From Phallusia mammillata (Eukaryota), in the NCBI GenBank assembly GCA_965637545.1, contig OZ281495.1:21948001-22012000 (forward strand): a stretch of 64,000 bases of DNA, read 5' to 3'. The notes beneath the pieces were generated by a model. The model searched no databases and was not told where the DNA came from. It saw only the letters and a list, made by a program, of their open reading frames with translations. The position numbers and the translations under genes are program-made. This document shows positions 1-25,500 of the stretch, one piece after another; position 1 is the first letter of the stretch; the number at the start of each line of letters is the position of its first letter.

Positions 1-2835
1 ACAAAATGTTATCATGTTACAAATAAGAAATTTGCAATGATGATTTGACTTTAAAAAACTCGACCGCATTGTTTGCATACCATGAGCTCGCGCGAAGGGC
101 GATCCGGTTAGTGACCGGGAGCTGGAATTATTATACCAAGTCTTTCTGTTCTTCGAACAGCAAGGGAAGTTGTTGTTTTCGTTTATGCGCTCATACCAAG
201 AAAGTCATTGGACGAAATCCGTGCTGTGAACGCCATTCACTTTCGAATACTCTTTTAATTGTGTAAATACTCTTTTAACATTTTATAGTTTTTGTAGGAT
301 ATTTTCTATATTTTTTATGTGCGCTTTATATATAATTTTGCTGTTTTATTTTGAAATGATGGCGTGCGACAAACACAGAATAAAGAACTGTTGGCATTGT
401 GTTGTTGAACTATGGGCACAATCTTGACCCAAGAAAATCGCTTTCAACGGAGCGACCAATTTTGTGAAGATTTTCAAACGGCAAGGCGCCAAACAAATAA
501 GCAAGTAAACAGGGTTTGTTGTTTCTGTTACGTACATGGCGGAAAATTGTCACAGTAACATTGCTGTGTCATTTCACCACAACAAACTAGTATCTTGGTG
601 TCCAAAGTTCGCAGGTTTCAACATGCCTGTGTAGTATAGTTTCTGGCAAAAAAGCCCTCAAAAATTAACAGGAAAACTGCCAACGCAAGTGAACAAAAAT
701 AAGTTTTATATTTCAGCTTTCAATAATGTATTAGTTTTTTTCAGCTGAAACAACTTATCACTGGGGATGTCATTCTTAGTACCGCATGCTTTATTTCCCA
801 TTTAATTTTGACGCGCCACGCAACTTTAGGCAAAATAGTAAGTGATTTAATACAAAAGTTGTAGAAGCACACAGAATAAAAAAAAGTTTCTTGTTTCACA
901 TCGGCTTAACCTACATGTTTCCGATCACACAACAGTCACCATTTTTTACTGTTGTAGAAGCATTTACCTAAAAATTATATTTACTATTTTTTTCTTTGTT
1001 GGCCCATGTTTTTAATGTGTCAAACATTTTTTGGTCTTTGAATCATTCCACTGTCATCTTCACCCAAGGGAGAAAATCATATCAGCAAACAGGTTTTTTT
1101 TAAGGTTTGGTTTGGGTGACCGCTAAGTAGTTTTAAGAGACCGCAAGTGTTTCATTTAAATACCCAAAAATAGACATATTTGCTTATTTGGGAAACCGCT
1201 GGAGAAATTTCCAAAACACCTTAAAAAAAACACTGTCAGCAAACAAAACAAACTTGACAATATTTTTAACAATATCAAAGCAATTAAATTCACGGTTTTG
1301 GCATCAAGTGAAGGTAGGTGTCAAATTCAAGCACATTATTGTTTTTTTTTATGTTTGCAAGAAACTTAAAACTTTTTTAGTGATTGTCCAAATTACCTAA
1401 TCATTTGCTGCTGATTGATGGGTTTTTCAGTAATGATTCGTTGTTATGTCGAATGTTGTTTTTTCTAACTCAAGTCCTGTAAATAATAAAATCAATATAG
1501 GTTGTTTTTATAATTAAAACTATGTTTCTTCAGTCAATTTAAAGTTTCTAGAAATTTATTTTTATTAAATTACTTTCTCAGCGAGTATACAGTATACATG
1601 TTATACATCTGCCTCGGGTGTTTCCATGTTTCATCAATATTTGATGTGGCAAGAAACTCTGTTCTCACGCAGAAAGATTTAAAATTCGCAATTATTGAAA
1701 AAACGTCAGACCATGACGTTTGAATTCGTAGCGAAATTTTTTTACCTAGTTTATTACGCAGAATGTCATGTCATAAAGGTCAATGGATTCAAGTTACGCA
1801 AAAACAACGTACACCGACGTAAAGTTTTGGTATTTTGGGCTTTAAACTAATCATAATACCTTCTTTCATTATACCGATAGCAAGAAGATACTGCGTACAA
1901 AGTGATAACAGCAATGTATTGGACAATAATATGAGTAGCGCGGGCAATTGACTACTATATTAGGTACCATTTGCGTCAGGTGCTTAGCGGAGAAAGAGCG
2001 TCACGGGCGAGTACTCGGCGGTGGGGTCGCGCGCAACCTTGTGCGCTGGTTTGGACGGACGATGTTTATCTGAACACGAATTTCGTACTTCTGAGATGTT
2101 GGTGCACGACTTGCGCCATGGCTGAGTTTGATACAGTATTGAGGCGTTTTTTTGACGCCAAGCAGTTATAATGTGCAATTAGAACATTTAACAGGAAATG
2201 CTGACACTGGCAAGATTTGCCGTTCATGGTTTGTTTATGTTTCTTTCCTTTGTGCTGTACGTTAACATCTTCAGGATAGCCTACAGCTAGAACCAAGTGA
2301 AGTGCTTGCAGAGGCTGGCACAGGACTAATAGATTTATGTCCTTTGTAAAAGCTAAGTGTAGCGGAAGAAAAGTGGCATGTAAAAGGGCTAGGTGTAATG
2401 TCGCAACCGAATGTTATTTATAACCACTTAGAGTCTTAGTGATGTGGAATCTAATCAGAGCGGTACAATGTCACCTACTAAACAAGACGCAAGGACAATA
2501 GTCCAAAGTCGCAAAAACTTAGCCACCATTGTTTCTTGATGTAATGATGATAAACTGTCTTGACGAAACCGCACCGGTTAAACAGACAATTTAATAAAGC
2601 CGGCCACATAATGGTAGGGTTTATGTTCCCGCAGATTACAAACCGCAGGATTAAGATTTTTTATTGGATTTGTAAACAATGGTCGCTTCACATAAGAATC
2701 TTTTTTTACCCTCCATAAATTAAATTGTAAATAGGGTCCTGATGCTATATTTGTGTCTCGTAGGAGATAATTTAGTTGTTTAGAGTTAGTTTGCCTTTTT
2801 GTTGCTGATTTACAATCAAATCGGAAAAGTTCAAC

Positions 2836-5800
2836 ATGAAATTGTCATTATTTTGTGTCTTTCTCTGTGCGGTTTCTTCCGCAGTCGGATGTGGTTTAAT
2901 AGGTAAGGGTATGTTTAGTTAACATCACACAAATTCACCTATAAACGGAAACAATAGTCAAATAATACACTGCGCACTTCTGTTAAATATTCTTTCCCTG
3001 TGGGAAACCCTAAAGTATTAAAACTCAATACAGACACCAAGCACAAGTTAAAATTTGCGGTAGTAATTTTTTATTGGCATCAATGCAATAATAGTTGAAG
3101 AAGATTTACAACATATCAAGTAAATTTAGGAACAACCTTTTTGTATATTAGAGCGAATATTTTTTTACCGTAACATTACTCCAAGAAGTGAAACCATGAC
3201 CGAGTTATGAACATCTACAGACTACAGACATGATGTTACATTGTGACTTTTTCACAGGTTTCAGAAGAATAATCGAAATCGACGGATGCAATTCAGTTTC
3301 AATTGATATCAATGCTTGCAAAGGTTGTTGCCAATCCACCAGTTATTCGTCCGACCTCCAAACCATAGCCAGGTCGAAGGGAAAACACAATATCATATCA
3401 AAATCATCTTGCTGCGTTATTCATTCCATGATGGAGGTAAAAAATCCAATCAATTCAATTTTAGTCTTACGCCATTTTGTGACTTGTCGGGTTAAGATTA
3501 TTTGTTGTATTTGTATTAGTAGGCTTATTTCATTTCGTTAAATAGGAATACGCATTTGTCTATAACATATAGTACGGTTGTATAGGTGAAAAAGTTTAAA
3601 TTTTACACAACATAAATGAAAAAGAGTTTGTCGATGTGATATAGAGAAACGTCGTTCATTTACCGTTAGGTTTTTTGAAAAAATAAACAATTTTTTTAAT
3701 TAATCTTGACATTACCAATATAGTGACCTTGCTAAAAATGAGCTGATCTGTCCTCGCATAAACAAATCTTAATTTAAGTTCAGTATCTTTTCTAAGATGT
3801 AAACAAGTTTGATAAACGTTGTAGCCACATGTAATTTTGTTAAAAGGTTACAAGCTGCACTAAACGAAAAAAAAATATCTGGTTATTAGTGGAACATTAG
3901 CCTGCATGAGAACAAAAGTACAAATCTAAATGCGATACCTTCACATTTAATCCAGGTGTAATTAGCACACATACAAAACAAAAAAAACTTTTTTACTTAA
4001 TTGACTGTTACATTTTTTTTGTACATCCACACGCACGCAAAAACTAACTGTCAAAAATAAGCAATATAAAAGAAAATGGAGAAAATTGTTACACGCACTA
4101 AAATAAAAACATACTGGTACGTTCTATTGATATATCTGTATGCACGAATAACAATGTAATTATGATACGTAACATAACTTGTAATTTGCGCATTGGGACC
4201 AAAATGGACTTCAAATTAAAGAAAAGCTAACTAAATGGGTTCACCAAATATCACACATACTAACAAACCCCAATGATATCAAACAAACCGCTCCTCCATG
4301 TCAATCAACTCAGAGAACTTGGTCGGTGGCACGCAAAGAGGGCTTGGTGTTTTGCATAAATTGTGGACCCAGAACCAGCTATTGTCCGAAAACCGTTTTT
4401 TCATTTGCTCGGAATTTGGACTTCGAGATTGGAGAAACTCGTGTTGGGATGGGTCGTTAGTGTTTGCATAACTGTTTGTTGGAAGGCGATTAAATCTTGC
4501 ATAAACACGTTACGCGTCATAGTTTTGTAATTGTTTGTTGAGTAAAATCTCCGTCCTCTGTCCGTGTTGCTTTAACCCGTAAGACAAAGCGCAAGATAAC
4601 CAACGTGAATTAGCTTTGGCAGTAAATAGCGTTTGGGGTCGTTATGTTGAAGGTGCAGACCGCGCATCGAGCAATAGAGAAAGGCTGTGTATAGGCGTAT
4701 AATAAAGGCAAAATTTGGGACTTTGATAAATTATGCATCGGTGCAAGATTGACGACGTGTCGAGAAATCGGGGAATCAGGGGTATGGCGACCCTTCATCG
4801 TGGGAGACAATCTGCAAGCGCGTATCGAAGGAATTTCATTGTAATTACTTGCAACAACGCTTCAGGTTTTCGATACCTGTCGGGCGCGGGGCGTTGCTGT
4901 GTATATTTGCAACTGAGATGCGAGCGCCGATAACGGGTTTGCGCTTGATATTTTAATGCGAAAAGCTGCAATTAAATTCAATAGCGGCGCTGGCAAAAAT
5001 CCTCCCCGAACCGCGGTGATTAATTAAGGTGTCCCGTTGCAGACGAGTGCGAGGGAACTAATACTTGCAGCATAGATTGCAAAAATCGATGAAAAAGATT
5101 GACTTGCACCCAACAGATTCTGAAATCACAACCTTTGCCCTGAGATTTGCGGTTTCTGTTCTCCCCGTTGTTGATCATTTTGCCACTTTTCTGCGCATGT
5201 GCAACGATATCAGTACGATTTCGTGCGAAAAGGCACAATGAGCGATGAATATCAGCAACCCTTGTGATGGGACATGTCAAAAAAACGCTTGATAATCTTG
5301 CAGCAATGCATTACACAGCGCGCCCATGTGTCAATATGTGCTGCCTCGAAGCGAAAACGCCTGTCAGGCAAGGACATGCGTGCGAGGCAGAAAGGTTGGC
5401 TTTTTATCTATTTTTATCGGTTTAGTGTCGTTGTTTACGCCAAAAGCAAATCAATGCCTGATCTTTAGGGCCTTGTCACGCATCCCTGTCGAAGAAGATG
5501 TTTGTTATAAGCACTCGCTATGCTGTCACTTGTTTACGGGCTCAATGACCTCTATTCAGCTTTCTAATCAGAAGCAAGTATCAAAACAAACAAAACTAAT
5601 TCATTAACGCAACATTCTCCTTCCGCCGAACGACAATGCTTACAATTCATTTGCGCACTACCCGCCTGATTCGTCCGAATTCCTACAGTCGTGCACTGAG
5701 GCAACGGCACAAGGCTCTTACAATCTGGAAATGGCCTTGTTGTTTTCGTCGTGGCAAAATCATTGTCACGAGCGCACATGGTGTGTCGTAGGCTCGTTAA

Positions 5801-8800
5801 TGCGATAGACTTAGATCAAATCAGCTAGTTTGAACTGTTTTGACCAAAGGCGATGTAGATGATCACCGATTTCTCACAAAAATTTTCGTACACGACCAGG
5901 CATCCTGTTTTGTCACAAGTCGCGACATGACGCGTTTTTGACGTCACAATCTAATCTGGAGATGGCCTTTACATTCCAGCGATTCGCTAATCGCCGGTGT
6001 CAGAAACTCCGCAGGCGAATATCGCGGTTACCAACAACCGCTGACTTGCGGGAAGTCGCACCGCTTTGACGGCGCATCTGCCTGCGCGGGACTATTGTCA
6101 ACATACGCCACACTCGCGTGAGAGCCGGTTAGCCCGCGCCTCTGTTTCGTAAACAAATCCCGCGAATCGAGCAGGTTCAATGTGCATCATAGTAGCAAAG
6201 TGGCTTGCGCGCTAAACACATGATAGGCATCTAGCTTCATGCAATCGACAACCATCGCCCTGCTTACCAGGCGACGCTGGACGATCAGGTGCAAGATCCT
6301 GACACGATAAAGGAAAATGATTTTCGAATGTGCTGTGTCATGTGTCAATTCCTTTTGGCGACGCCGTGATTGACAGATGCAGCAGCGAGTGATTGTAGGT
6401 CGGCGGTGCGTGCAAGGGCTAATATAATCGGGTAAACGTTGTTTTTCCAAAGGCCGCGCCGATCGCCGTGGTGCATTGTTGTGGTGTGGCCCAACACCAT
6501 TTTACCAATTACATGATAGCGCCAATGGCCAGCGAAAATGCTAATTCCAAGGCCGGTCTCCACGCGACAAGTTACACAAATATTATTACTGATTCGTTCC
6601 CTTAACAATCAGTCCCCCCTCGTGTATACCTTGTGACGTCACTATCGCTTGATCTCGCCTGCCACTCAGCGGCGAGTGCGCATTGGGACGACGCACGCTT
6701 CGACAGATGAGCCCTGTTTATCTCAAAGGCCATTTGCAGGCGACGACGTGACCACCGTTCCAATATGACTAAAGCCTGCCGTTTCACGGTTGTCACTACC
6801 ATGACAAGATATTGTCAAAGCGTCGAAACTCCGAGGTTTTTATTTAACGACCTCTTTTGTTCGTACTGCTCTCTAGTTTGACATAAATTTTTAAGGGTTG
6901 TTTTGTTTTCGAGTGACGCACATAAGGTAACCTTCGCATAGAAATCCGGCTCGATCTGAAGAGTTGATAAGGTAATGTGCAGCAAGTGACCACCTATCTG
7001 GGAACTTTCCACAAGAAATCACTGAATGACCGCACAAAATTATTAGATGGTTGTTTATTGCGCAGTGGGAAAAAAACTGACAGGCGCAAATATATCACAC
7101 CTCCGGGTTCACTTCGGTTGAAATGCGGCGGAAAACCACAGAATGCCGTTCAGTGGCAGTTACTGGAAAGCGAAAATCGTCCGCGTATCGCCCTCCTAAT
7201 ATTATGCTTAATTGGCTCGTTCAACCTAACCGTAAACGATAATCTCGCAGATGACAGGTGCCCGCTGACCGCACACATTTGTCAGGATATTTTGATTGCA
7301 GACCTTGGGTCATCAGCAACGAAATTGCGTGACAAGGAGACATGTAGCTGTTTGCAACACTTAACGTAAAATTTTCTGAGGACTTAATATCTGCGACATA
7401 TTTTGGCTTTTCCCACTTTGCTTACCAGTTTTCAAAACAGTTTTTCTGTTTCAATAATACATTCACTGCCCACTGTTCATAAAACCAGTATCAGCTGTTT
7501 AGGAGACGCCGATAAAACATAAACAAAATGGCGACCACCGTGTGTTTTTGGATCAATTTTACATGAACCTTTCAACTTTTGCCTTCTGGTCGTCCATAAA
7601 TAGAAATGGTTCTGATGCCGTAAAGTAGCGGATTCATGAGGTAGTCACACCTACATACCGGGAATGAGTCATTCTGTGGTTTGAACTCGTTCATCATTAA
7701 TGCTTAACATTTCAACCGACGCGCTTGAGATTAGGATATTGGCAATCACCTCTGCATGAAACGAACTTGTGTTAAAGTGTTAAGAGGGGGCGTGAACACT
7801 TTAACCGGTGTCACATCGCGAAGTATGACAAAATCTACTATGGATTGCGTCAACTACCGTATACGCCACACCATCAACTATTTTCCCCAAATTAATTTTG
7901 ACCTTCTGTATAATTTTTTATTTTTGTTGATGTCAGTAAATCTTGTCAATTCTTGGTGGTGATGTATATGAAGCCAAGTTTTTTTTTACAATAATCTCGC
8001 TGTATGTGATGTCAATAATACAACGGCGTGCTGTTAATAAACCACTTTATCCCTGTGTTTAAGCGTTACTACACGGATTACGACAAAGTTTGACCGTTTC
8101 GGCTATACATTATGGACAATCCGCATCTGCTTTGGAAATAGATGAAATAAATTTTCGAAACAATCTGGGAGGTCCTTGTCTTACTATGATTATCTTAAAA
8201 ATCTGATGTTGGGCGTGTGACTTATTGACCCAGATTTCATGTCTACATGAATAGATGGGTCGTTACCCAGAAATTATGCATCAACAACGTAGTGTTTTTT
8301 ACGAATGTTGCACACCCTTTCCTCAAATTGGCATTTCTCACAAACTGAATAATAACTACCACACACGCACATAGAGCAATCGCCAAGTAAGGAACTTAAA
8401 AACGAAAGATTGAATTTTTGATAATCAACAAACAAACCCATTAGTTTACTGGCAGATCCTACGTCACGTTTGACATAGTTATAAGATTTCGTGGCCCATG
8501 GAAGCCCAGCCCCTGTCGAGATACAAGGTGATCTTCCAACTTCTCGGAAAACTGTCAATCTGGCACACAAATGTTGATCGTAAAACGATGTAACGGGGTC
8601 TGACGCCCTCTTTGTAATTATTTTCAGACGTTTATTTGGCACTCAGTGATCTTAAATTGACAGAATCTTAGTGCTTCTGAAACTTTCCAGCACGAGCAGC
8701 TGATCCGCAATTTCACGGTTGTTCTCGAAATTTCCATTTGCGCCGCGATCGCATACGGAGCGTGTACCGGTTGGCGAAAATTACTGAAACGTCACAAATC

Positions 8801-11800
8801 ACAAGGGTATCATCTAGAATTCCACGGGGTGACATATGACACATGCGGCGTAATCATCGCTTTCCGTACTAGTCACCAAACAGAACTGAAAATGTGGCGC
8901 GTTCCTTAACACCTCTGTCACTGCTTGATCCCACGAAAATAGCCAACATAAACCGTAACGTCTGTTCAATGTGGTAAGGCCGAAAAATCAAAACGCTATT
9001 TGTGGCTTGTCCTGAGTCAAATATTACTGAAATGAGACAACCTGCGCATTTTACGTAACATGGCCATGTTACCGATGTTCAATTCTCATTGGAAAACGCC
9101 TTGCAAATTAACTTGTTTATGAATTTCAGCAGCAAAAAAACAACATCAGGTGTTATGAATACGTGCATGTTCCCAGGCAACCGTATTTCCATATATGTCA
9201 GGTGATCGTGGTCATGCAACTTGTCATGTTCGTGCCTTGTCGGATAAACTATGTCCTCGAGATATCGATACGATACTAGGGTGCTACGCACGATACTAAA
9301 ACGTCATAAGATTTCATAGACTCTAAGAAATCGTGGAGAAAATGCGGCGACACTTTCCGTATTTGGGACCAAGTGGGTTAATCGCACTTGAACTACATCT
9401 TTTATCGTAGATTCGCCCAGGCGAATTTGGACTGAAACTATGATCAATATCTCGCGCGAGTGAAGCGAAGGGCTTCCCGAAACCACCGTACATTAAACAG
9501 ATTAAAAAAAAACAGAATTTTTTTCCTGTAGCACGCGATCCAGTGAAACTTGTTTAATCACCGACATCAAAAAAACATCATCTGAATCATATCTTTAAAT
9601 GTCATGTCCTGAAATATACGTATGTATGGCAACAACTACAAACTTAATTATAAACCCGCGGTGATGTAAAAATTATTCTGCATTTTATGCATCTTTTGGC
9701 GGTTGGACCAACCAACAATCAAATAGTGTTGCAAGTGCGTGTGTCTTCCAGATTTTCCGAAGAGGGCGGCGTTTTTCAACTTTTCTAGTGATACATAAGT
9801 CATTAGACCGTACAAGGCCACACACTCAGTTGTGAATAATGAGAAATGCATGTTAACTGTGATTTTCGCTTTAACCGGTACTTCGAGATTAGTAAGTTTC
9901 TCCAGGTGTTCAGGAAACCACAGTTAGTTTTCCAAATTTGGTCTAACTAGCAAATGAAAATAAAAAACTACTTAAGGGTAAACAACGACAAACTCTTACA
10001 ACATTCGCCTTTGTATACGACACGCCCGATATAACGGAGCAAATTAAAACGCTTTGGCAACCACCACAAAGCCCGCGATATATTCCGCGAAGTCTGTTTC
10101 TCGGAAAGCGAAGTTTTCAGAATTTGCTTGCAAACCGTAATGCCCTTCTATGTCTAAACATACCCAGCAGCAAGTTTAACATTTTGAACACCATGAAGCA
10201 AAAAATATTAGCTCACCAGGGTACATCTTTAACTTGCTGTACGTTGGCTAATTCGCCGCCTTGCGTCGACATGTGTTAGCTGTATAAACAGCATCGCATA
10301 TAACGTACGTCATTTCGCCACCGTCTCTTGATTGGAAAACACAGACTTCTCCTATGTAGACTATACGAATTTTGACGAGGCGCCAGGTTACGGTAATTGT
10401 GGGTCAATGTACGTGGGTTGTGGGTATTTTTATGTATACGCAATTAAATAATAATTCTATTGCAATGCACGCTACGACCTTAAAGTATGGATGATGCAAA
10501 CATACCACCATGGGTGTGACTACCATAAATTTTAGCGAGAGGCACGCCAATTTGTAGACGCCAAAATATATTTTCCGGTTAAATATTTTAAAATGTTTTC
10601 ATGCAAATGTTTTATAACAATGATTTTGTATTTAATTCAGTTACTGTTAACAGCAAAGTGTATTTGGATGCAACAGTACTTAGATCAGACTACTGAGACT
10701 AGACGGCTTTTAGACAGAGATCTTCAAAAGGCATTAATTTAATTGCAAGGCTAGTGGCGTCTATTATCACACTGATGCATCGGGGATAACTCCTTACAGG
10801 GCACCCTAAATGGAAAGGCCGCAATCATATCGCAATTCACATGCGGAAAACTCCATGAAAATGGCCTTTGCGGTGCTAGGAAAGTCCACTAATTCACGCA
10901 GGACCTTTATCGGATCGTTTTCGATCCCACACAAAGCAAAGATCTGATGTTACGTCACATCGATGGAGCCATCGTCTGCAAACTGGATAATTTAAAACGG
11001 AAATTGATAACTATATGGGCTGAGTAAAGTCAAATTTCCTGTGGCTTATTACAGGCGGATGCTTTAGTTTTAAGATTGTCCGATTTGGTGGAAGTGCGTG
11101 GCAGCGTGTTTCCGACATTTAGCGTTTATGTTGATGTCGAACAACCATGGTCGTGACACATAAATATGTTGCTCTTCGGGACTTCAATCACTGATCCCGT
11201 AGCGCGGACGTGTGAATCAGTGTCTTATCGCAGTTGCCCGTGATGAACGGCTTAACGCACGCGAAGGCGTCACTCTCGTGTGACAGGCCGCAATTTTACT
11301 TAATATCGTTCCCGCCGATCGAGCTATTAGGGTCGTCCCTTGCTGCTCGACGAGAAGGTAAAACTGCCGCCACACGCGCTAAAGCCCGCAATTGAAGTGT
11401 TGATGGTCCGTCAGACTACGCGATCATATCTCGGCGTATGACGTTCAAAAGTTCGGGCGACTGGCTTGCGCGTTAAGCTGGATCCGATAAAATGAACACA
11501 TTAGGGCTCGGGGTGCCGCAGCTAAGGTATTAGGGATCAGCAATTACTGCACGACCCCGGAGAAGAATGCGATTTTAATGCGTAGAGTGGCGTGACCAAT
11601 TGCACGCCGGAGAAAACAAAACATCAAGGTCGTGGTTTTAAGCAAGCGTAAACATATCAGTACGATCCATGGTGCGTGGTTACTCCAGGCTTTGAAACTT
11701 TGCTTGTAAGTAAGCTATGGGAAAAAGGTCATATACTTCCCGGATCAGTTCAGCTTAGGGTGTTTATGCTAGTCAAACAATGTCGTCCGCACCAGTACTT

Positions 11801-14449
11801 TGACATGATCAGTCAAAGAAAGCAAAGTGACACACGAGTTCAAGTTGGTCGCTCTTATCTTATCCGTTCGTGAAAAACACGTCCGACGACGTACGAGCGT
11901 CGGTTTTTGACGAGTTTTTGATACGAACCAATAAGCACTCCCAAAAAAGCGCGTCTACATAACAGGATGTTTGTTTTGCGCGCCGGACACCAGAAATAAC
12001 TCCTTGAGTTGATGTGGCATGCGGGTCCGTTTTACACATCGCAATGGTTGCGTTAGTGGATCGGGTTTCAGTTCTGAACCCTTGTACTGGCAATGAACTA
12101 CGGTGTGTTGCAATAGTTCAAGCGGTAAATATTTATCGCCCTCGTGGACTGCCTTGTTTGGTCACAACAGACCTGGAACGCCATCTGCGACAAATATTTG
12201 GCACACTGATGCAAACGTATCAAGAAATGGCCGGTTTATCCACTTGTTTATAGTACACAGTGGGCGGAGGCGTTTCGAATGTGTGAAACCGTCACAAGCG
12301 ATTACGTTGCATAAGACTGTGGATAGATGATAACGCGTTATTGTACCAAACAAAGAAGCGCTTATGTGATTTTTGCACATGTGCCCTGTGGGGTAATTTT
12401 GTCACTGATATCTCATGTTATTTTAGGCGCTTATAGGGAAAAAATTAAATTCCACTGTTTCGTGTTATCCGACATGTCGCAAAAGATACCGACCACCGTG
12501 TTGCATAAGTGATAAGGCATCGCGGATCGTTAAACCTATTCTACAGTGACCCTGCAACACAGCCTACACGTCACCAGTGGTGAATGTCGGGCAAAACGGT
12601 GGTGGTACTTCGCACAATCTGTTTGTCGTAAAACATACACTATGGGACGAGTTTCAAGACAGTTTAAGTTGAACCTATAAGCTTGAATGCGAAGAAATCA
12701 TTTTGTTTGCAGGTCGCAAGTGTTAAACCGCGCCTGTGCGAAAGCGACGCACGAAGTTGTTGCAAAATGTTTGTCCCGTCAACCAACTAGAGCGCCGTTT
12801 GTCACTGCGCGGTCGCTAAGTCATCGTTTCACAATACAACACAATTGGAACTAATTACAAACGTAATTAGTTAAACATTTTTACCTTGCGCCGAGCCAAA
12901 AAAAGTGAAAAACACGAAATATGTTAATTTTAAGGTTTGCTAAATTCCAGCAGAATTTTTTTTAAAGAAACAAAAACTTACTTTACCCTGTGACTATTTG
13001 AACATATTTTGCTAAACCGTTAGTGTTTATATTGGGCACCTTCATATGTTTGTTTATCAATAAACACGGTATGTTGCAAACTTGCACTGTTTCGTTGCAT
13101 CCGGACTTATCTCGTGCTGTTGTCAATCAAATAGTGTTGCCAAAATTATTTCAACACAGCAAAATTTACTAAAATTTGCGCCTGCTTTCACATACCACCC
13201 TGTACGTTCTAGTATTATAATGTTTACTATTAGGTCGCGTAAGAAGTTGTCCGATTGGCTGTTTCTTGGAACGCATAGTCTACAGAACGCATGAAGACAC
13301 CACAATGCCACACACAAACTACAACTTCTTATGTACCCAAATAACGCAATAGATTTGGTATTTGGTACGTGTACACCTTAATCAGAAATCACGTTCCCAC
13401 TTGTTATGGTTGTTTGCATCGTTCTTTCTAATGAAATTGGCAGTTAAAAAGAAGTTACTATCTAAACACAACTAGGTTTTGAGATTGACACACATTATTT
13501 TCCATAAAACATATTAATTCAAAACATCGAAATTTTAAATTCTGAACAAAACTCTAAAATAGCTATTTAAATGCTAGGCAATTTGTTGTACATCAACATT
13601 TCGTGTATTGGTATGACAAATTTAAATATGAAAACCAGCAATATGATGTTTTGAATGTAAAGAGCAAATCTTTTGGCCCTTAAGTATCTAGATAAACCGT
13701 CGAAAGGCAATGCGAACAAAAACTGATCCAATGGCTTGATGAATTAAAGTGGCATCTCATAAACCCCAAAACTATTTTCTTGTGAATATTACAAATATTT
13801 AGTTTCTGGAGTCATTCGCTGTCGATTGGCCAATTCAGCCACACCTTTATCCAACACAACAACCTGACATTTAATAGAGCAATTTGCATTTTGCACATCA
13901 GCAATACGTAGCTCGACGCAATGACGCGGCATGCCCGTGTACTGTCATTTACGGTCCTCTGGCAGATCGCACGTGCCAGGGATGCGACGAGCAAATAAAC
14001 AAAATACACCTAATGCAGAGGAAAATCGCACCATCTCACGTGAGGCAATATATCTGCCAGCAATCGAAATCCTGTAATTACCGGCTGGCATTTATCCACG
14101 TTCCATCAATGGCCTTTAGATGCTGCATTAGGACCGATTTTGATCTCATTCGATTGTAAACAGGGTTTCACTTGGGCCTCTTAATTATTGGCCATTTTAA
14201 CCATCGCTTCCATGACGTACTTCTTGACCAAATATTTCATTTTAACGCCCGGAAATGAGAAAATCAAATCCATTACCTTAATGCGTTTGTTCAAATAGTA
14301 ATCAGCTGCCTATTTCTCACACAATTATCACAAATCATTTGTCTTTCTACTTGCAGTTAACGTTTGCCATCAGATGCGGCGGGGAGAATGTGACGAAGAA
14401 AATCTTTACAGCCACCGAATGCAGATGCGGACTTTGTGAGGTTGATTAA
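2836..14449 (+). CDS. GPHA2: Glycoprotein hormone alpha-2 (thyrostimulin alpha)-like cystine-knot hormone subunit, 3 exons, 112 aa
   Basis: Exons 2836-2902, 3258-3436, 14357-14449 join in phase through GT-AG introns: MKLSLFCVFLCAVSSAVG (signal) CGLIGFRRIIEIDGCNSVSIDINACKGCCQSTSYSSDLQTIARSKGKHNIISKSSCCVIHSMME/LTFAIRCGGENVTKKIFTATECRCGLCEVD*. Cys pattern (CxGxC, S-x-CC, C-x-C-xx-C end), HNIIS and IFTA segments match GPA2. Confidence 0.88.
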
Positions 14450-14766
14450 CAACCGTGTCCACTCTAAATGCCGTGGTGGTTTTAGACGCGGCCCACAAAT
14501 CACATTTCACAGCGTGTACTAAAGCAGCAACGCGGTGCTCTTTGCTTGCTTTTTCTTCCGAGTTAAAATCCTGCATTATTTTTTGAGATACCTTTTTCTT
14601 ATTATTTTCAGCATGTGAAACTGTTATTTATGAAATTGTAAAGTGTTTGTAAAGTTACATGTATAGACTTGCAACGGTACCTTACCTATTCCTTTTGTGT
14701 GGCGGTAACCCAACCCCTTATCGCAGGCTACTGTTATTCCAATATAGTCTGCATGGATCGCATGTA

Positions 14767-14772
14767 AATAAA
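14767..14772 (+). terminator. Candidate poly(A) signal of GPA2-like gene
   Basis: First AATAAA downstream of the stop codon (about 320 nt); no transcript support. Confidence 0.3.
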
Positions 14773-17333
14773 CACTACCCCTGTCAGCACAACAGGGAAA
14801 CAAATACAACATTGGAATAAATCTTATCGCACAAGCCACATGCACAAGTTTATTTTAGTTGAGTCGGCCACGTTGCTTTTTATTAAGTCCAGAGCGTTTT
14901 GCATGATTCCTTTCTGCCATGAATATTTGTGTGTTTATTTTTCGTGTGACATTCGACGTTATGTCTATACTGCCATGGCGGCGCTTGCAAAATTCGCTCT
15001 GTAATAAAACACCATCATGTCGTACTTGATTTTTAATCTGATACGAGCACAAAGAGGCATCAGTGCACCGGAGAGTTAGATTAAAGACACGGCATCGTAT
15101 AAGATGTGGACAGGCGATTACATAGTACAGGTTGCCGCAAATTTCCCGATAGGTTCCAGTCTAAACACTGACATATTGGACCTTGTGTGTCTGCGTTAGT
15201 GATCAACAACGATCTGCAGTGTGAAGATCGGATACGACGGACCAGGCCGGAAATTAGTGGCGTTTACGATGTGCCACCGCTTAAAGTCAATTGTCGTAGG
15301 CAACTGGTACAAAGTGTAGCTAATTGTTAAACCACCATTTGATTTTATCGCTTCCATGCCATTTTGGTGCTTGGTGCGCTTTGTAACGACTATTTGGGTT
15401 CGAATTTCTATTTCAGTTCAACACTGCGCAAAAATTCCAATATTTAAAGCAGGCAAACATTAGGTAAAGATATGTTCAGCCCGGGCTCTCGTTTTAACCC
15501 ATATTTGACCACAAACATGTCGCGGTTTGTCGTAATTGGCGGGGTACAAATGCGTCTGTTTATGCCTAATTAACCGTTTCGAATGCTTATCAATCATCAT
15601 AGGTGAAAACGTGATGGGCAACGTGTTTGATAGACGTGCCGTCATCGTTTGACAGCCGGTGAGTTTCTATTTTTAGCCAATGTTGGGTAAGTCTTCGCCG
15701 AATATAGGACGAAGAGCGAAAGGCAACAATCGATTTGCGGTCGTTTCAACAAGGTGCGGGGTCGTTATCGGTTAGCGGACTTGCAATCTTGAGCTAATTT
15801 TCAACCGCAGAAAAGTTTACAATATCGCGCTGGTTTCGTTGTCAAGAAAACAACGAGGTTGTGTCGCAGTCCAGGAAATCGTGAAAACCGGTCAGAACAT
15901 GTTATGATAACAAAAACACCGCGAAGGGCGTTGTTGCCGACCATTAGGGCTACATAAACAGTGTATGGTTGTCCTCTGAGCAATTGCATTTGATTAAAAA
16001 AATTCTAGGCAAGTTACAAGATATTGCATAGCAGGTAAAGACGAGGTCATTCACACGCAGTACATCTCACCCGCCGTGTCAATATTTATGAAAAAACATG
16101 CGCTCGGTGTAAAGGTCGATACACGAAGAATGTTAGATGTTCGGCGGTCTGCAAAGCCAGCGCAGGTATTCCGCAAATACAAGAACTTCAGGTGTAGCTT
16201 AATTTGACCTTTGGGAATTTACCAATAAGCTGATGTGGAAATTGAAAACTGCCAATGATGCCAGTTTTTATTTCCATTTAAATGGTACCAAACACTTCGT
16301 TACAAAAAAGCTCGCCTTAATAAGGAAATATTTCGTGTTTTATTTTACTACATACCGGACAATAAAACGTGCGTGCTCGCTGTTCTTTGATACTTGTGCA
16401 CCAACGTATTTACTACTTTGTGGAATATCACCAGGTTACAAATTCTCCTAAATCGAATCGAATTTATCGGTACAAAGTTATGTGACAGAAAAATAATTGG
16501 AGAAAAAAACGTCGAATGTAGCAACATTCATGCAACAGTTCAAAATTTCGAAAAACGAAATTAAGCAAATATATCCGTTCGCAACGGTATTGCATATTTT
16601 TTCCATCTATGTGCCTGAAAAGATCTTTTTTTCTAAAACGCTAAACTCTTACTCATTAATGTTCACACAAAAGCAACCAAGCAGTCAGTACCTTTTTACT
16701 TTTGTCACTTAACATTTACCAAAACACAATCCAATAAACCATTTCCTTCCTTACTTCCGAAACACCAAAGTAATTCGATTGTGGGACGGAAGAAGCCATA
16801 CATGGTAGACGCTTTGCGTACCTTTTCCAAGTGAGTCAGTTTACTAATGGTGTTAAAGAGGTATTTGTGTAAACTTTGTAAACGTAGGGAGAAAACAATC
16901 TTGCTTTCCAAATACTTTTGGGTTCACTGCCGAGACGTTTGTTCTAAGAAAGATGTATAGACTGTGTTTAAACAAGCTGGTTTTCGTGAAGTCCCTATGG
17001 TGAATCACTATCCGATTGAGTCACAAAAAATACATAACATTTCATTCCTTGTACCGATTTCTCATCGCTAAATTTCCCAATTTTTCTACAAAAAAAACTT
17101 CCATTCTCTCCTTTCGTTCAATCGCTTAAAGTCCACCAGTATACGTCAGGATTTTTAGTTTTTATTAAAACAAAGCACAAAAACAAAATCACAGCAAAAT
17201 GTATACATTTGAAGAGTGGTGCAAATCACAAGGGTTTAAAACTTCAATAATATTCTAAATTGGGATAAAATGTCGTGGTTGACGTTGGGGTGATTTATCA
17301 AAATCATTCTGACGCAAAACGTAAGTAAACTCC

Positions 17334-17339
17334 TTTATT
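17334..17339 (-). terminator. Candidate poly(A) signal of GPB5-like gene
   Basis: AATAAA on the minus strand about 350 nt after the stop codon; no transcript support. Confidence 0.3.
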
Positions 17340-17684
17340 AGCATGAGACTTGCGCCTTGGACGTATTTTCGCCTTCATGCAGTTATAGTTCCTATGATTT
17401 CCGAGGATTGCGAACCCTGAGGCTGCTTGCATAGATTGGGAGTGACAGTCCGACGTCATTTGACGGGCTTATCGTCTCGCTCAGGGCGAGTGGCGAGACA
17501 CTTCGGAACAACACAGAGTTCGGTTTGACGCTTCCAGCGGGAATGTGCAAATGTCAGTGAAACAGTGGGATAGGGCCGCCCTCGCAAGGCTTGCGTGCGT
17601 GCCAGCGCTCGGTGCCGCGAGTTCAAGCGGCCTCGCGATTTGAGGTCTCAGACCACGAAGCAGATGTAACTGTGGTGGCATTCC

Positions 17685-18401
17685 TCACTGCAGATTCCGG
17701 CAGGCCATGCGGCTTGACGAACAAGGTGCGCATGTGCAGGATTCTGGATAGGTGATGTTGTAGTAGGGATTCACATTGGGCGCACAACCTTTGAATCGTA
17801 GTTTTCGGGTGACTGCCTTAAGCGGGCTGCAGACAGTGTGATTGTACTCACTGTGGCGTGGAGATACGTCGGGAATCTGAAAGGAAACAAAATCCGTTAA
17901 TTGAATGAAGACAGAAGAGAAGAGTATTTTCATAAAAGCACAATTTACACAATTTTTTTAATGTTGAACAATTTAGAATTTTGCACACACCTCCCAAGTC
18001 TCACATGCTCCGGCGCACAATTTGACCCGGATCTTCGAAGGAAAACATCCCTGCCTCGAAACTTTCATAATACCATGGCTGATATTGCATGATGCGCAAG
18101 CAGAATGTGCAACTCCTTTTCGTCCAGCGGAGCGCACGAGTCTTTTCAGGATGGATGTCTTCACAACTGGGACGTCTTGCACTTCAAGAAAAGTTGAGGT
18201 ACTGCGCTTGTTGACCTCAATCAACTTGGATGCAAATCCAGCAAGTTCGCTTCCACTCGCTGCTCGCTCTTCGGCCGTTGCTATGGTGCATTGGCTGAAG
18301 AACATCACGATACTGAGGTAGATGAATAGACTCAACATGGTCTTTGCTCCAATGACTTTGCCACTGACTGACGAGTTCTGCTTCTTCATGATTATTTCCA
18401 T
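17685..18401 (-). CDS. GPHB5: Glycoprotein hormone beta-5 (thyrostimulin beta)-like subunit with N-terminal pro-region, 2 exons
   Basis: Exon 1 ends at 17991 (..CAGACETWE|gtgtgt); exon 2 is 17876-17685 (tttcag|IPDVSP..HTVC..GCAPNVNPYY..SCTCAPC..C). CETWE motif and Cys spacing match GPB5. Start uncertain: ATG 18401 (first after the TATA box, 200 aa), 18389, or 18338 (MLSLFIYLSIVMFF signal, 179 aa). Confidence 0.9.
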
Positions 18402-18506
18402 TTTGTGAACCTTTTGTAGTGCGTATTGCAACTTTTTTGAGATCAGCTATATGATGCGTCTGCTGCTCAGGCTGAATTAGGATGGCTCAACTACTTGCTG
18501 CGCGCC

Positions 18507-18514
18507 TTTATATA
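18507..18514 (-). promoter_or_regulatory. TATA box of GPB5-like gene
   Basis: TATATAAA on the minus strand about 105 nt upstream of ATG 18401, in CpG-rich context, with a GATA motif (plus GATAAG, 18551-18556) further upstream. Confidence 0.55.
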
Positions 18515-19512
18515 GGCTCTTCTGGTTCGGCTCGGGCGCTACGGGCCAATGATAAGATATGCGGGCGCGCTCATCGCCGTAAATAAATAAATCAACGAAG
18601 GATCCCGAAGCTGCTCCTATACGCCGCAATAATCTGGCATTTACATATTCAAGAAAAACTCGGAGCATAAATCATTTATACCACGCAATATTGCGACCAG
18701 CGCAGCCTTCTTTAATTCAACCCGGGGTGACCGTTGGCCTTTTTCCGTGCATCTCGCTGTTGACGCACGCCTCAGGTTGCCGTGACGTTTCACGCAATGC
18801 GTAAGTATCGATTGAGCACAGACCGTAAAGCTTTTAGCTGAACGTAACACCATTAGTGCCAACAACCTTGCTAAGCTGCGTTTCCTTTCTCAAGTTACAA
18901 ATGACGTAAAGATTTCATCTATCGTGGTTCCACTTATGTTAGGTTCTACTCGGTTAGTAATAGCCGTGTCACAAGGTAATTACTAATACTCCATTCCAGT
19001 ACTTAACATACCTGTCAGGTTAGTTTTCGCAGTAATTGCTTGTCACCAATCTTGATCAATAGACCACCAAATCTAAAACGAGAAGCGATTAGCAATATGA
19101 TTTATCATTGTTGTCTGAATTTGTTAAAGCCTCATTATTGTATCTTGTCGCAAAATATTATGGTTAAAGTTCTCACTAGAAATAAAATAACACACATTCG
19201 GTGTGATTAATGTGACATTACGAGACTTAAACTTATAAACACTGAAAAATGACTAAACACTGAAAAAAAACACATCTTGGATTAAGTAGGTATAGATTGG
19301 TTGGAGCCGTATAAAAATTAACACATCGCTCAGACTTTTTACCCCGAGGTTTTGTGTCATATCCTTTTGCTGCTTTCGTGTACATTATTTATAAGATACT
19401 TATTTGCGCCATATGTGCATTTTATTTGAATTTTTGGGTCGAGAAAAAACAAAGTTTTTTACGCCGTTCGAACCCAAGGAGCGGAATGCACTTGGCCGAA
19501 TGGTCCAAGGCG

Positions 19513-22531: not shown

Positions 22532-25500
22532 CGCTGAACTGAACGACTTGTCTCAATCTCAACGTTTGTGTCAATATGGAGAAGTTATTGGAGACGATGC
22601 AAAAGCAGATGCAAGAGCAACAACGACGTCATGGAGAGCAACAACGACAGCATGAAGAGCAAATGAATCTTATCCTGTCTGTGTTGGAAAAGTCTTCTGG
22701 TCCCGCCGTTGCCAATTCTTATGTTGCTGCACCTAGCTTTAACCCCTTTGATTCCAGACAGAATTGTGGGACGACTACTGATTTCGCTTCTCAACATTTG
22801 TGAAGGCTCATGCAATATCCGAAGAGGGTTGACCAAGTGGTATTGACGAACCAAACCACTACAACCTACAAGCTGCTGTCCAATTTAGCAGGACAAAGTT
22901 CGCCAGCGAAAGACGTCAACGATCTAACAATGAAGGAGATTGAAGGCTTCATGAAAGATCAATTTGATCCCAAGCGTTTTATTATTTGCGAAAGGATCCA
23001 AGAAGCAGTCTACAAAATCCGCACCGAATGAGAAGCCCAAAGAAGCTGTCCAATGTTATCGCTGTGGCAAAACTGGTCATTTTGCGCCGGTTTGCCGTCA
23101 CAAGAATGCTACGTGTCGATATTGCAATCGCATAGGTCATACTGAAGATGCTTTGCCGTAAGAAGAAGTCCGATGTGGTCAATTCGATGACGAATGTTCA
23201 TTTTCTGAAGTCAATTTCCACTCATTTCCCACTACACAAGTTGGAGGTTGTGGTGTCACTTTTTGCAAATTTTGCGAGTTTGAGCTGGATACAGCAACCA
23301 GTGGAAATTTCTTGTCTGTCCACAATTGGAAGAGAATCGGGTCGCCTAAGCTTCGGGCTCCTGATCGACGTTTTAATTCTGCGACAGAGCACCCAGTGCC
23401 TTTGTTGGGTATGTTTACGACGCCAACTACGTATGGTGGTCGAGTCTTTGATCAAGATTTCTTTGTCACGAAAGTTCCGCTTAAATTTGCTTGGTCGCAA
23501 TGCCATTTGTACTTTGGAGATTTCGGTTGACGACATACTGCATCATTCATCTTCCGAAGATTGTGTGAATTCCGTTGTTACGTCGGGCGACCAACGCTAT
23601 CTGCCTTTACAAGATGCTTGCCGAGGTCTTTGCAACGAGTTTAAAGACATTTTCAAACCTGAACTTGGTTGCTTGAAAGGTTTAGAGCTTGAAGTGAAGT
23701 TTCAAGCGGAGGCTAAACCGGTTTTCTTTAAGCACCGTTCTTTGCCATTTGCGCTACAAGAAGATGTTGCCCGTGAATATGATGCAGGAATTGCCCGAGG
23801 ACTCCAGTGAAGTTCAATGACTGGGGTACACCGGTGGTTCCCGTTCGAAAAGCACCGTTGTCAACTCACAACAGGCCACGACTAAGACTTTGCGGGGATT
23901 TCTCAGCCACGGTAAATCCCCAATTGGCACTCCATCGACATCCACTACCCCTTTCAGATACTTTGATGCAGAAGCTTCGAGTAGGATTTGGTTTCACGAA
24001 AATCGATCTTGCAGATGCGTACAACCAAATACGTTTCGGTCCCGAAAGCCTGAAAAGGTTGGCTTTGAGCACTCACCGAGGTGTCTTGCTGCAAAATGCA
24101 TTACCGTTTGACATCACCTCGGCTCCGGGATACTTTCAACAGATTATGGACGAACTGACGCAAGATCTCCCAGGAGTGTATATCTCGATGATTTACTTGT
24201 CATCGGTTCATCGGCAAAAGATCACTTGAACAATCTTCGTCGATTGCTTCAACGTTTAAGTGAGAAGGAGCTTCGCTGTCGTTTCGAGAAATGCAAGTTT
24301 GTACAACCCACAGTTGAATACTTGGATCATATACTTTATAAAGAAGGCATCAGGAAAGCTTCTAAACTCGATGCTGTGCTCAATATGCCTGCACCGAAAG
24401 ACGTATCGACGTTACGTTCGTTCCTTGGGTCGGTTCAATTTTATAGCAAATTTTTGCCATCAAGTTTTTCTTCCATTGCTGAACCTCTGTATCGTCTGAC
24501 TCGAGACAAAGTTCTTTGGAATTGGAATAACGAAGAATCAAAAGCTTTCCGTCAATTGAAGACATGACTGGCTACTGACAATGTCTTAACTTACTTTGAT
24601 CCCTCTCTTCCTATTGGGATATCTTGTGATGCGTCCAATGTTGGCATTGGTGCCGTACTTTTTCATCGCTATTCGGACGGAAGCGAGAGGCCAATTGTCA
24701 ATGTCTCAAAGTTACTCTCATCCAGTCAGCGCAACTACAGCCAAATCCAAAAAGAGGCTCTTTCAATTATCTTTGCACTGAAGAAGTTTTACCAGTATCT
24801 TTTTGGTCGTGAATTCATTCTTGTCACCGACCACAAGCCATTGTTGGCACTTTCTGGTCCTACCAAGCCAACTCCTCCACTTGCGGCAAATCGGTTAGCA
24901 CGATGGGCGCTTTTCCTTGGTCAGTTTAAATACAAAATCGAGTACAGGAAGACCGCCAGTCACCAGAACGCCGATGCACTCAGCCGTTTACCAGAAGGGG
25001 AAGATCCCTTTTTTGACAAAGAGGAAACTACAGATGATGTCGACACTGTTTGCACCATCACTACGCTAAGTCGTCAAATCCAGCACACATACCCCAACAC
25101 CATGAAGAAGGAATCCGGAAAAGCTGATGTTCTTTCCCGAGTCATGCGTTTTTTCCAACACGGTTGGCCAACAACTCTTTCCTCGAATGATCCAGCTGCA
25201 AAATTTCGCAGGTCTGCTGATTTATTGACAGTTTCTCACGGTGTTTTATGGAACTCGATTGGTTATTCCGCAAAAGCTACGATAACATGTGCTACAACTG
25301 CTATACCAAGGTCACTTTGGCATTCAAAGGATGAAGCAGTTGGCTAGGTCTGCAGTGTACTGTCCGAACCTTGATGACGACATTCTGGTTCTTTGCCGAA
25401 AATGTTCTATATGTCCATCCATGGATGATTCCTGAAAAACCATGGAGTCGTGTTCACATCGACCATGCCGTAAACTTCGTGGGAAGCAATTGGTTGCTCA

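What the first reader, a model, noticed from the sequence alone, without database searches (positions are those of the whole stretch)
3258..18100. Complementary extra cysteines in GPA2 and GPB5: a candidate disulfide-locked thyrostimulin
Seen in sequence: both predicted mature subunits have 11 Cys. The alpha extra Cys is in the knot motif (CKGCC, exon 2); the beta extra Cys is three residues before the first knot Cys (SACASC). Established: human GPA2 and GPB5 have 10 Cys each; vertebrate CGA has CMGCC with Cys31 bonded to Cys7 of an N-terminal C7-x-x-C10; vertebrate glycoprotein hormones are non-covalent dimers, and GPB5 lacks the full beta seat-belt. Inference: the two halves of the CGA 7-31 bond are split between the subunits, leaving one free thiol on each near the dimer centre. 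This could give an inter-subunit disulfide replacing the seat-belt, and may bear on how the CGA bond arose.
Basis: partly seen in the sequence, partly recalled or inferred. Interest (0 to 1): 0.85.

Follow-up and report, generated by a model that had tools for sequence, protein, structure and literature searches.

The report
Ascidian thyrostimulin with paired extra cysteines
Two neighbouring sea-squirt hormone genes (GPA2 and GPB5) each carry one extra, unpaired cysteine, placed so that the two subunits could be locked together by a disulfide bond, and the same pair is found in a second, distant sea-squirt lineage.

Summary
The window holds one GPA2-like gene (+, 3 exons, 2836-14449) and one GPB5-like gene (-, 2 exons, 18338-17685), tail to tail.

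- **Cysteine count:** each has the canonical 10-Cys spacing plus one more.
  - Alpha has C-K-G-C-C in the knot ring, which aligns without gaps on C-M-G-C-C of human CGA.
  - Beta has C-A-S-C, an extra Cys three residues before knot Cys 1.
- **Transcripts:** RNA contigs from three runs confirm the alpha exon 2/3 junction.
- **Beta conservation:** the extra beta Cys is invariant in all six ascidian-type GPB5 sequences I could gather (Styela clava, three styelid-like, one metagenome species, the window).
- **Co-occurrence:** walking along the metagenome locus found its alpha exon 2, which reads C-R-G-C-C. Both extra Cys therefore co-occur in a second lineage.
- **Outgroups:** published tables for vertebrates, amphioxus, starfish, insects, molluscs and an annelid show neither.

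An alpha-beta disulfide is the best reading (about 0.6). Descent of the CGA 7-31 bond from this state is speculative.

A 2023 Styela clava paper (Yang et al.), not readable here, may already report the covalent dimer.

The parts
2836..2902 (+). GPA2-like exon 1. Start codon, signal peptide, and knot Cys 1 (Cys19). Ends in phase 1.
   Evidence: ATG at 2836 and donor G|gtaagg at 2903. An RNA contig of X7 carries 311 letters upstream of the exon 2/3 junction, which is enough for exons 1-2 plus a 5' UTR.
3258..3436 (+). GPA2-like exon 2 (179 nt). Loop 1 Cys, the ring C-K-G-C-C, loop 2 and the CC pair.
   Evidence: Acceptor cacag|GT and donor GAG|gtaaaa. Pfam PF00236 scores 26.8 bits against a cut-off of 25. 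Ungapped alignment to hCG alpha residues 25-64.
3326..3328 (+). Codon TGT of the extra alpha Cys (Cys46), inside the knot ring at the position of CGA Cys31.
14357..14449 (+). GPA2-like exon 3. Loop 3 Cys, C-x-C-x-x-C, and stop TAA.
   Evidence: Acceptor ttgcag|TTA. Contigs of X7, X11 and X13 join it to the end of exon 2.
14450..14998 (+). GPA2-like 3' UTR, as far as contigs reach.
   Evidence: Contig pieces at 14355-14998 in runs X7, X11, X13 and X15 (table 8).
17991..18338 (-). GPB5-like exon 1. Signal peptide, a pro-region of about 55 aa with basic sites, C-A-S-C, loop 1 and the ring C-A-G-A-C. An in-frame ATG also lies at 18401.
   Evidence: Continuous ORF with donor GAG|gtgtgt. The orthologues have the same layout.
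18096..18098 (-). Codon TGC of the extra beta Cys (Cys81), three residues before knot Cys 1 (Cys84, 18087-18089).
   Evidence: The column is invariant in six sequences.
17685..17876 (-). GPB5-like exon 2. Knot Cys 4, loop 3, C-x-C-x-x-C, the last Cys, and stop TGA. No seat-belt extension.
   Evidence: Acceptor tttcag|ATT. Pfam PF00007 scores 26.5 bits against a cut-off of 24. Aligned to LH, TSH, CG and FSH beta chains.

Best explanation
The window carries the thyrostimulin locus of an ascidian: GPA2 and GPB5, convergent, with their coding ends 3.2 kb apart. Each subunit keeps the full set of ten intrachain cysteines and has one more with no partner in its own chain.

Proposed mechanism:
- After the signal peptides are removed, the two subunits associate head to tail, as in all glycoprotein hormones. 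This brings the two cystine knots and the two N-terminal segments together around the pseudo-twofold axis.
- Alpha Cys46 (in the ring, at the CGA Cys31 position) and beta Cys81 (at the position that mirrors CGA Cys7) then form one inter-subunit disulfide.
- That bond would do what the seat-belt does in vertebrate LH, FSH and TSH: keep a heterodimer together at hormone concentrations.
- The unpaired thiols would also hold unassembled subunits back in the ER.

Shown: the gene models, the alpha splice, the Cys positions, conservation of the beta Cys, co-occurrence in a second lineage, and absence in outgroups.

Inferred: the pairing itself, ER retention, and the functional equivalence to the seat-belt.
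For: 1. Odd Cys number in both mature chains, on otherwise canonical GPA2 and GPB5 spacing.

2. The beta C-x-x-C is invariant in six sequences:
- the window (C-A-S-C);
- Styela clava XP_039248966 (C-G-G-C);
- P0004 and P0005 (C-G-Q-C);
- the P0007/L010 contig (C-G-E-C);
- the metagenome species (C-D-K-C).
The basic sites of the pro-region all lie upstream of it, so it stays in the mature chain.

3. The metagenome species also has C-R-G-C-C in alpha exon 2. It is seen in three metagenome assemblies (L021, L022, L023) and a fourth contig (L018). L023 comes from the same 69-kb contig that carries its beta gene. So both Cys co-occur in two lineages whose alpha chains are about 46% identical and whose beta chains are about 40% identical.

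4. Neither Cys appears in the published outgroups:
- human, Bos, Branchiostoma, insect, Aplysia and Capitella tables;
- starfish GPA2 with 10 Cys and GPB5 with 8 or 10;
- C. elegans alpha2/beta5, where all 18 Cys are intrachain.

5. Geometry:
- In alpha2/beta5 and in hCG a quasi-dyad relates the two knots, and the ring Cys emanate from the interchain beta-sheet segments.
- In CGA the ring Cys31 bonds a Cys three residues before knot Cys 1.
- In VEGF the Cys at the same ring position (Cys60, between knot Cys57 and Cys61) makes the interchain bond of an antiparallel dimer.
- The alpha chain here has only 0-2 residues before knot Cys 1, so it has no N-terminal segment of its own to cover the ring Cys.

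6. From memory, not verified here: engineered hCG cross-links alpha5-beta8 and alpha31-beta37 (Heikoop 1997; Moyle laboratory) place these four positions close together at the dimer centre.
Against: - No heterodimer model, S-S distance or biochemical result could be obtained.
- By the same quasi-symmetry, alpha46-alpha46' and beta81-beta81' homodimer bonds are also sterically plausible.
- Alpha contigs were found in four runs, but beta only as two flanking pieces in one run. Much alpha may therefore be made without beta.
- Alpha exon 2 could be read in only two species. Styela alpha was not found within 10 kb of its beta gene.
- Signal-peptide cleavage sites were set by eye. Alpha exon 1 of the metagenome species was not found.
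Confidence: 0.6

Rival explanations
1. The extra Cys make covalent homodimers: alpha-alpha through Cys46-Cys46' and beta-beta through Cys81-Cys81'. These are the main secreted forms. The heterodimer is minor or non-covalent.
For: - The quasi-dyad puts equivalent positions of two chains opposite each other near the axis.
- Single subunits or homodimers have been proposed as active forms in amphioxus, C. elegans and mosquito.
- Alpha is seen in more RNA runs than beta.
- Odd-Cys relatives (bursicon, the cystine-knot hormones of non-bilaterian animals) are presumed covalent dimers, some of them homodimers.
Against: - Both genes carry the extra Cys together in two lineages and lack it together in all the outgroups I could check. 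Two independent homodimer inventions would not predict this.
- The two positions are the two halves of a bond known from CGA.
- The genes stay linked and convergent.
Confidence: 0.2
2. The extra thiols do not bond each other. They may stay free, be capped (cysteinylated or glutathionylated), serve only for thiol-mediated ER retention, or link to a third protein such as the receptor ectodomain.
For: No chemistry is available. Odd cysteines in secreted proteins sometimes behave this way (general knowledge).
Against: A free thiol inside the 8-residue knot ring would risk scrambling the knot. The conserved pairing in two subunits argues for a mutual partner.
Confidence: 0.13
3. The odd counts are an annotation artefact. 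Examples: the alpha signal peptide is cut after Cys19, the exons are wrong, or the loci are decaying pseudogenes.
For: Cleavage sites were set by eye. The beta splice is not covered by contigs.
Against: - Cys19 is needed as knot Cys 1, and its spacing (13 residues to the next Cys) equals that of amphioxus and insect GPA2.
- The alpha exon 2/3 junction is seen in three runs.
- The reading frames are intact, all canonical Cys are kept, and the same features recur in other species.
Confidence: 0.05

Closest known systems
Thyrostimulin subunits GPA2 and GPB5 of vertebrates, amphioxus and protostomes
   Same: - Same Pfam families and the same Cys spacing.
- Same L1-L3 bridge Cys in both chains.
- No seat-belt Cys in beta.
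- The two genes are linked.
   Different: Those have 10 Cys each, all intrachain, and the dimer is non-covalent. Here each chain has an eleventh Cys, and beta has a pro-region of about 55 residues.
Vertebrate common alpha subunit (CGA), Cys7-Cys31 bond
   Same: The ring reads C-x-G-C-C, with identical spacing of 26 residues to the CC pair, and the alignment is ungapped. The partner Cys in CGA sits in a C-x-x-C with knot Cys 1, as it does in the ascidian beta chain.
   Different: In CGA both Cys are in one chain, and the L1-L3 bridge is lost. Here the alpha chain keeps the L1-L3 Cys, has almost no N-terminal segment, and the C-x-x-C is on the beta chain.
VEGF/PDGF family
   Same: These are antiparallel cystine-knot dimers in which the Cys at the same ring position makes the interchain disulfide. 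In VEGF this is Cys60, between knot Cys57 and Cys61.
   Different: The family and receptors are different. There are two symmetric bonds to a loop Cys (Cys51), and the dimers are homodimers or near-homodimers.
Bursicon and the cystine-knot LGR ligands of non-bilaterian animals
   Same: These are LGR ligands with an odd number of Cys, usually 11, and are presumed to be covalent dimers.
   Different: The interchain Cys are at other positions: 8-9', 9-8' and 14-14' in the AlphaFold models of Gong et al. These are not the ring and N-terminal pair seen here.
Styela clava Sc-GPA2/Sc-GPB5 (Yang et al. 2023, Int J Biol Macromol 229:401)
   Same: Same hormone in another ascidian. The Styela beta chain (P0001) has the same C-x-x-C.
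   Different: The paper is not held. As far as I recall its abstract, it reports an intermolecular disulfide between the two subunits, but I could not check this. If so, the covalent dimer itself is already described.

Membership tests
GPA2 (glycoprotein hormone alpha-2) | Matches the glycoprotein hormone alpha profile (Pfam PF00236) above the gathering score. | tested here: met
   Exon 2 alone scores 26.8 bits against a cut-off of 25, E = 5.4e-6. The best solved relatives are CGA chains.
GPA2 (glycoprotein hormone alpha-2) | Cys spacing: knot, L1-L3 pair, CC, and C-x-C-x-x-C. | tested here: met
   Spacings of 13, 9, ring, 26, 13, 14, 1 and 2 equal the Branchiostoma and insect rows of Alvarez Table 3.
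GPA2 (glycoprotein hormone alpha-2) | Ten Cys, all intrachain; ring reads C-x-G-x-C with no Cys inside. | tested here: not met
   The ring is C-K-G-C-C, giving 11 Cys in the mature chain.
GPA2 (glycoprotein hormone alpha-2) | Gene lies next to the GPB5 gene, as in most invertebrates and Ciona. | tested here: met
   The genes are convergent, with stop codons 3.2 kb apart.
GPB5 (glycoprotein hormone beta-5) | Matches the glycoprotein hormone beta profile (Pfam PF00007) above the gathering score. | tested here: met
   Exon 2 scores 26.5 bits against a cut-off of 24. It aligns to LH, TSH, CG and FSH beta chains.
GPB5 (glycoprotein hormone beta-5) | Human-type Cys spacing, and no seat-belt Cys (the equivalents of hCG beta Cys26 and Cys110). 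| tested here: met
   Spacings of 13, 9, 1-G-1, 19, 14, 15, 1, 2 and 6 equal the human row of Alvarez Table 2. The chain ends 4 residues after the last Cys.
GPB5 (glycoprotein hormone beta-5) | Ten Cys, with none before knot Cys 1. | tested here: not met
   C81-A-S-C84, giving 11 Cys after the signal peptide. The same holds in five other ascidian-type sequences.
CGA (vertebrate common alpha subunit) | N-terminal C-x-x-C in the alpha chain itself, and loss of the L1-L3 bridge. | tested here: not met
   There are only 0-2 residues before knot Cys 1, and the L1-L3 Cys (Cys33, Cys89) are kept. It is GPA2-like, not CGA.
Covalently linked cystine-knot dimers | One unpaired Cys in each chain. | tested here: met
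   11 + 11 Cys on canonical 10-Cys frameworks.
Covalently linked cystine-knot dimers | The interchain disulfide is actually formed. | not testable with these tools
   This needs a dimer model with coordinates, non-reducing gels or mass spectrometry.
Thyrostimulin (functional hormone) | The heterodimer activates a TSHR-type LGR. | not testable with these tools
   No receptor assay was possible, and no LGR lies in the window. The 7TM exon at 52860-53519 is an ordinary rhodopsin-type match.

The most novel reading that the evidence does not exclude
The ascidian alpha Cys46-beta Cys81 bond is the trans form of the vertebrate CGA Cys7-Cys31 bond, inherited from the common ancestor of tunicates and vertebrates. 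On this reading the ancestral hormone was disulfide-locked between subunits. After the locus duplicated, CGA kept the ring Cys and acquired its own N-terminal partner, turning the bond from trans to cis, while the seat-belt took over subunit locking. GPA2 and GPB5 lost both Cys.
Probability: 0.15. Interest if true: 0.8.

Novelty: new member of a known kind. Interest (0 to 1): 0.5.

Why it matters
Whether thyrostimulin exists as a stable heterodimer in vivo is an open question, because GPB5 has no seat-belt and the subunits dissociate at hormone concentrations. An ascidian hormone locked by a natural disulfide would be:
- a clean case of an obligate heterodimer in the sister group of vertebrates;
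- a natural stabilised ligand for receptor and structural work;
- a test of how cystine-knot hormones switch between covalent and non-covalent assembly.

The match between the two extra Cys and the two halves of the CGA 7-31 bond also gives a concrete, testable idea for the origin of a bond that Alvarez et al. called unique among 8-residue-ring knot proteins.

Tried and rejected
**Protein searches**
- Word-index searches with beta exon 1 and with alpha exon 2 (read on into the intron to fit the length filter) found nothing.
- A word-index search with Styela beta added only one more beta sequence, P0007.

**Styela and styelid-like loci**
- The Styela locus L001 (10 kb either side of beta) holds no alpha exon. 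A tblastn hit at 15516-15560 was spurious.
- The styelid-like contig L010 (7.5 kb) holds no alpha exon either.

**Metagenome species**
- Alpha exon 3 lies 14 kb from beta. Exon 2 was not in the next 11 kb.
- The gene calls on these contigs use code 4 (TGA read as Trp). A guessed ORF was not on record.
- Four further look-ups with clean ORFs reached exon 2. Its exon 1 was not found within 7 kb.

**Structure and literature**
- Beta exon 1 core against solved structures gave no hit.
- Paper searches for the engineered hCG cross-links and for Yang et al. 2023 found no readable text. Both are cited from memory only.
The structure tool returns no coordinates and takes one chain, so it could not give the S-S distance.

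**Readings considered and rejected**
- A CGA-like pairing within alpha (Cys19-Cys46) would leave Cys89 unpaired and loop 1 only 9 residues long.
- Removal of the beta Cys with the pro-region is ruled out because all basic sites lie upstream of it.
Full report
**What is in the window.** The region is eukaryotic, with about 40% G+C and no N.

On the + strand lies a three-exon GPA2-like gene:
- exon 1, 2836-2902: ATG, signal peptide, and the first knot Cys;
- exon 2, 3258-3436;
- exon 3, 14357-14449.

All introns are GT-AG, intron 2 is 10.9 kb, and the product is 112 aa.

On the - strand lies a two-exon GPB5-like gene. Exon 1 is 18338-17991 and exon 2 is 17876-17685, giving 179 aa, or 200 aa from an in-frame ATG at 18401. 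The genes converge, with stop codons 3.2 kb apart. A motif scan of all six frames finds no further alpha- or beta-like exon in the 64 kb.

Each exon 2 on its own passes Pfam's gathering score: PF00236 at 26.8 bits against 25 for alpha, and PF00007 at 26.5 bits against 24 for beta.

**Transcripts.** Contigs of three runs guessed to be RNA (X7, X11, X13; two studies) lie on 14355 onward. Before that point they carry the last 30 letters of exon 2, which confirms the exon 2/3 junction across the 10.9-kb intron. The alpha 3' UTR reaches about 14998.

For beta, only X7 gave contigs, at 17272-17621 and 18205-18571, so its intron is not confirmed directly. The same junction (CETWE|IPD) stands in the Styela RefSeq protein and in two contigs that read straight across it.

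**The cysteines.**
- Alpha has Cys at 7, 11, 19, 33, 43, 46, 47, 74, 75, 89, 104, 106 and 109. Cys7 and Cys11 are in the signal peptide's hydrophobic core. Cleavage after A16 or G18 leaves 11.
- Beta has Cys at 17, 81, 84, 98, 108, 112, 132, 147, 163, 165, 168 and 175. Cys17 is in the signal peptide, leaving 11.
- The alpha spacing equals the amphioxus and insect GPA2 rows of Alvarez et al. 2009, except that the ring reads C-K-G-C-C.
- The beta spacing equals the human GPB5 row, plus a Cys three residues before knot Cys 1.
- Alpha exon 2 aligns without a gap to hCG alpha residues 25-64. C-K-G-C-C falls on C-M-G-C-C and the CC pair on Cys59-Cys60.

Because all ten canonical partners are present in each chain, Cys46 (alpha) and Cys81 (beta) are the odd ones out.

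**Relatives: the beta chain.** The exhaustive HMMER search with beta exon 2 found four true relatives:
- P0001, Styela clava XP_039248966;
- P0004 and P0005, two Logan contigs close to Styela;
- P0002, an exon-2 ORF on metagenome contigs of an unnamed eukaryote.

A further styelid-like genomic contig came from a search with the Styela protein.

All six beta chains have C-x-x-C before the knot, reading C-A-S-C, C-G-G-C, C-G-Q-C (twice), C-G-E-C and C-D-K-C. All have a long pro-region whose basic sites lie upstream of it.

In the alignment, 11 Cys columns are invariant, against 13 of 97 other columns. The window, the styelid group and the metagenome species are only 35-47% identical to each other. 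The extra beta Cys is therefore as conserved as the knot itself.

**Relatives: the alpha chain.** No alpha exon lies within 10 kb of Styela beta.

In the metagenome species, alpha exon 3 lies 14 kb beyond beta on the opposite strand, the same convergent layout as in the window. I then walked along overlapping contigs (99.9% identical over 13 kb) and found exon 2 a further 17.5 kb upstream:
- It lies at L018:19648-19826(-).
- It is 179 nt, exactly as in the window, and in the same phase.
- Its ring reads C-R-G-C-C.
- The identical exon is in L021, L022 and L023. L023 comes from the 69-kb contig that carries the beta gene.
- The two alpha chains align over 90 residues with one single-residue gap and are about 46% identical.

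Both extra Cys thus co-occur in a second, divergent lineage. Exon 1 of that alpha was not found.

**Outgroups.** Several published sources show neither extra Cys:
- Alvarez's tables show C-x-G-x-C rings and no Cys before knot Cys 1 in human, other mammals, Branchiostoma, insects, Aplysia and Capitella.
- Starfish GPA2 chains have 10 Cys, and starfish GPB5 chains have 8 or 10.
- In C. elegans alpha2/beta5 all 18 Cys are intrachain.
- Alvarez et al. state that GPA2 and GPB5 have no Cys available for an interchain bridge, and that the ring-to-N-terminus bridge of CGA is unique among 8-residue-ring knot proteins.

**How it most likely works.** In alpha2/beta5 and in hCG a quasi-dyad relates the two knots, and the ring Cys emanate from the interchain beta-sheet strands at the heart of the interface.
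- In CGA, the ring Cys31 bonds Cys7, which lies three residues before knot Cys 1.
- The ascidian beta Cys81 is at the mirror-image position of CGA Cys7, and alpha Cys46 is at the Cys31 position.
- The ascidian alpha chain has at most two residues before knot Cys 1, so nothing of its own covers the ring Cys.
- In VEGF, the Cys at the same ring position makes the interchain bond of an antiparallel knot dimer.
- From memory only, engineered hCG cross-links alpha5-beta8 and alpha31-beta37 show that these N-terminal and ring positions of the two subunits lie within disulfide reach at the dimer centre. I could not find these papers in the library.

I therefore take a single alpha46-beta81 disulfide, standing in for the missing seat-belt, as the best explanation (0.6).

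The same symmetry allows alpha-alpha and beta-beta bonds. Alpha was also seen in more runs than beta. Covalent homodimers are therefore the main rival (0.2).

**Comparison and novelty.** The two genes are GPA2 and GPB5 orthologues by profile, spacing and linkage, but they fail the "ten intrachain Cys" feature. They are not CGA, because the L1-L3 bridge is kept and alpha has no N-terminal C-x-x-C.

They would work like covalently linked knot dimers (VEGF/PDGF, bursicon), using a pair of positions otherwise known only as the cis bond of CGA.

A functional study of Styela clava GPA2/GPB5 exists (Yang et al. 2023; cited) but is not held. My recollection of its abstract is that it reports intermolecular disulfide bonding of the two subunits. 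I could not verify this, so I rate the finding as a new member of a known kind. If that paper does not cover it, it is a new variant of a known kind.

The suggestion that the CGA bond descends from this trans bond is attractive but unproven. It needs six changes on my count, against four for independent gain. I give it about 0.15.

**Limits.**
- Signal peptides were placed by eye.
- The beta 5' end and splice are not confirmed by reads.
- The organism of the window and that of the metagenome contigs are not named by the tools. "Ascidian" rests on Styela being the nearest named relative and on the shared derived features.
- Alpha was read in only two species.

Noticed in passing
window 18100-18270 (-); P0001, P0004, P0005, P0007; L005:4864-5298: The beta pro-region is shared by all six ascidian-type sequences. 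It contains a conserved amphipathic stretch (F/Y-x-x-F-R/A-K/S-F/L-...) with basic or dibasic sites on either side. It may be a cleaved pro-peptide or a second product.
   Followed up: partly
window 18205-18571: An X7 contig runs from inside beta exon 1 to 18571. That is upstream of the TATA-like box at about 18513 and of both candidate ATGs. Either transcription starts further upstream, or the contig is DNA or pre-mRNA. No contig covers 17622-18204.
   Followed up: no
window 3437-14356; L018:2100-19648: Alpha intron 2 is very long in both species (10.9 kb and about 17.5 kb), in otherwise compact loci. The exon 2 length (179 nt) and its phase are identical in the two.
   Followed up: partly
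window 23100-26420 (+): A decayed LTR-retrotransposon pol, with reverse transcriptase (PF00078) and integrase core (PF00665) split over several frames.
   Followed up: partly
window 52860-53519 (+): A 220-aa ORF that matches rhodopsin-type 7TM receptors (PF00001, 32.1 bits). It has no leucine-rich-repeat part, so it is not the hormone's LGR.
   Followed up: partly
window 47729-48154 (+): An exon with a strong match to the 'possible tRNA binding domain' PF13725 (114 bits), as found in NAT10-type acetyltransferases.
   Followed up: no
window 36285-37853 (+): A 522-aa open frame rich in Q, N, S and T, with repeated A-I-Q-R-T-A/S-S/T-P-N-P motifs and no Pfam match. The local GC skew is strongly negative (-0.22).
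   Followed up: no
L011:14400-20189 against L013: One metagenome assembly carries a retroelement insertion (integrase- and RT-like ORFs) between beta and alpha exon 3 that the other assemblies lack. This is an insertion polymorphism in that species.
   Followed up: no
L002-L023 gene tables: The collection's gene calls on these eukaryotic metagenome contigs use genetic code 4 (TGA read through). Most listed 'genes' there are therefore artefacts and cannot be looked up by reference.
   Followed up: yes
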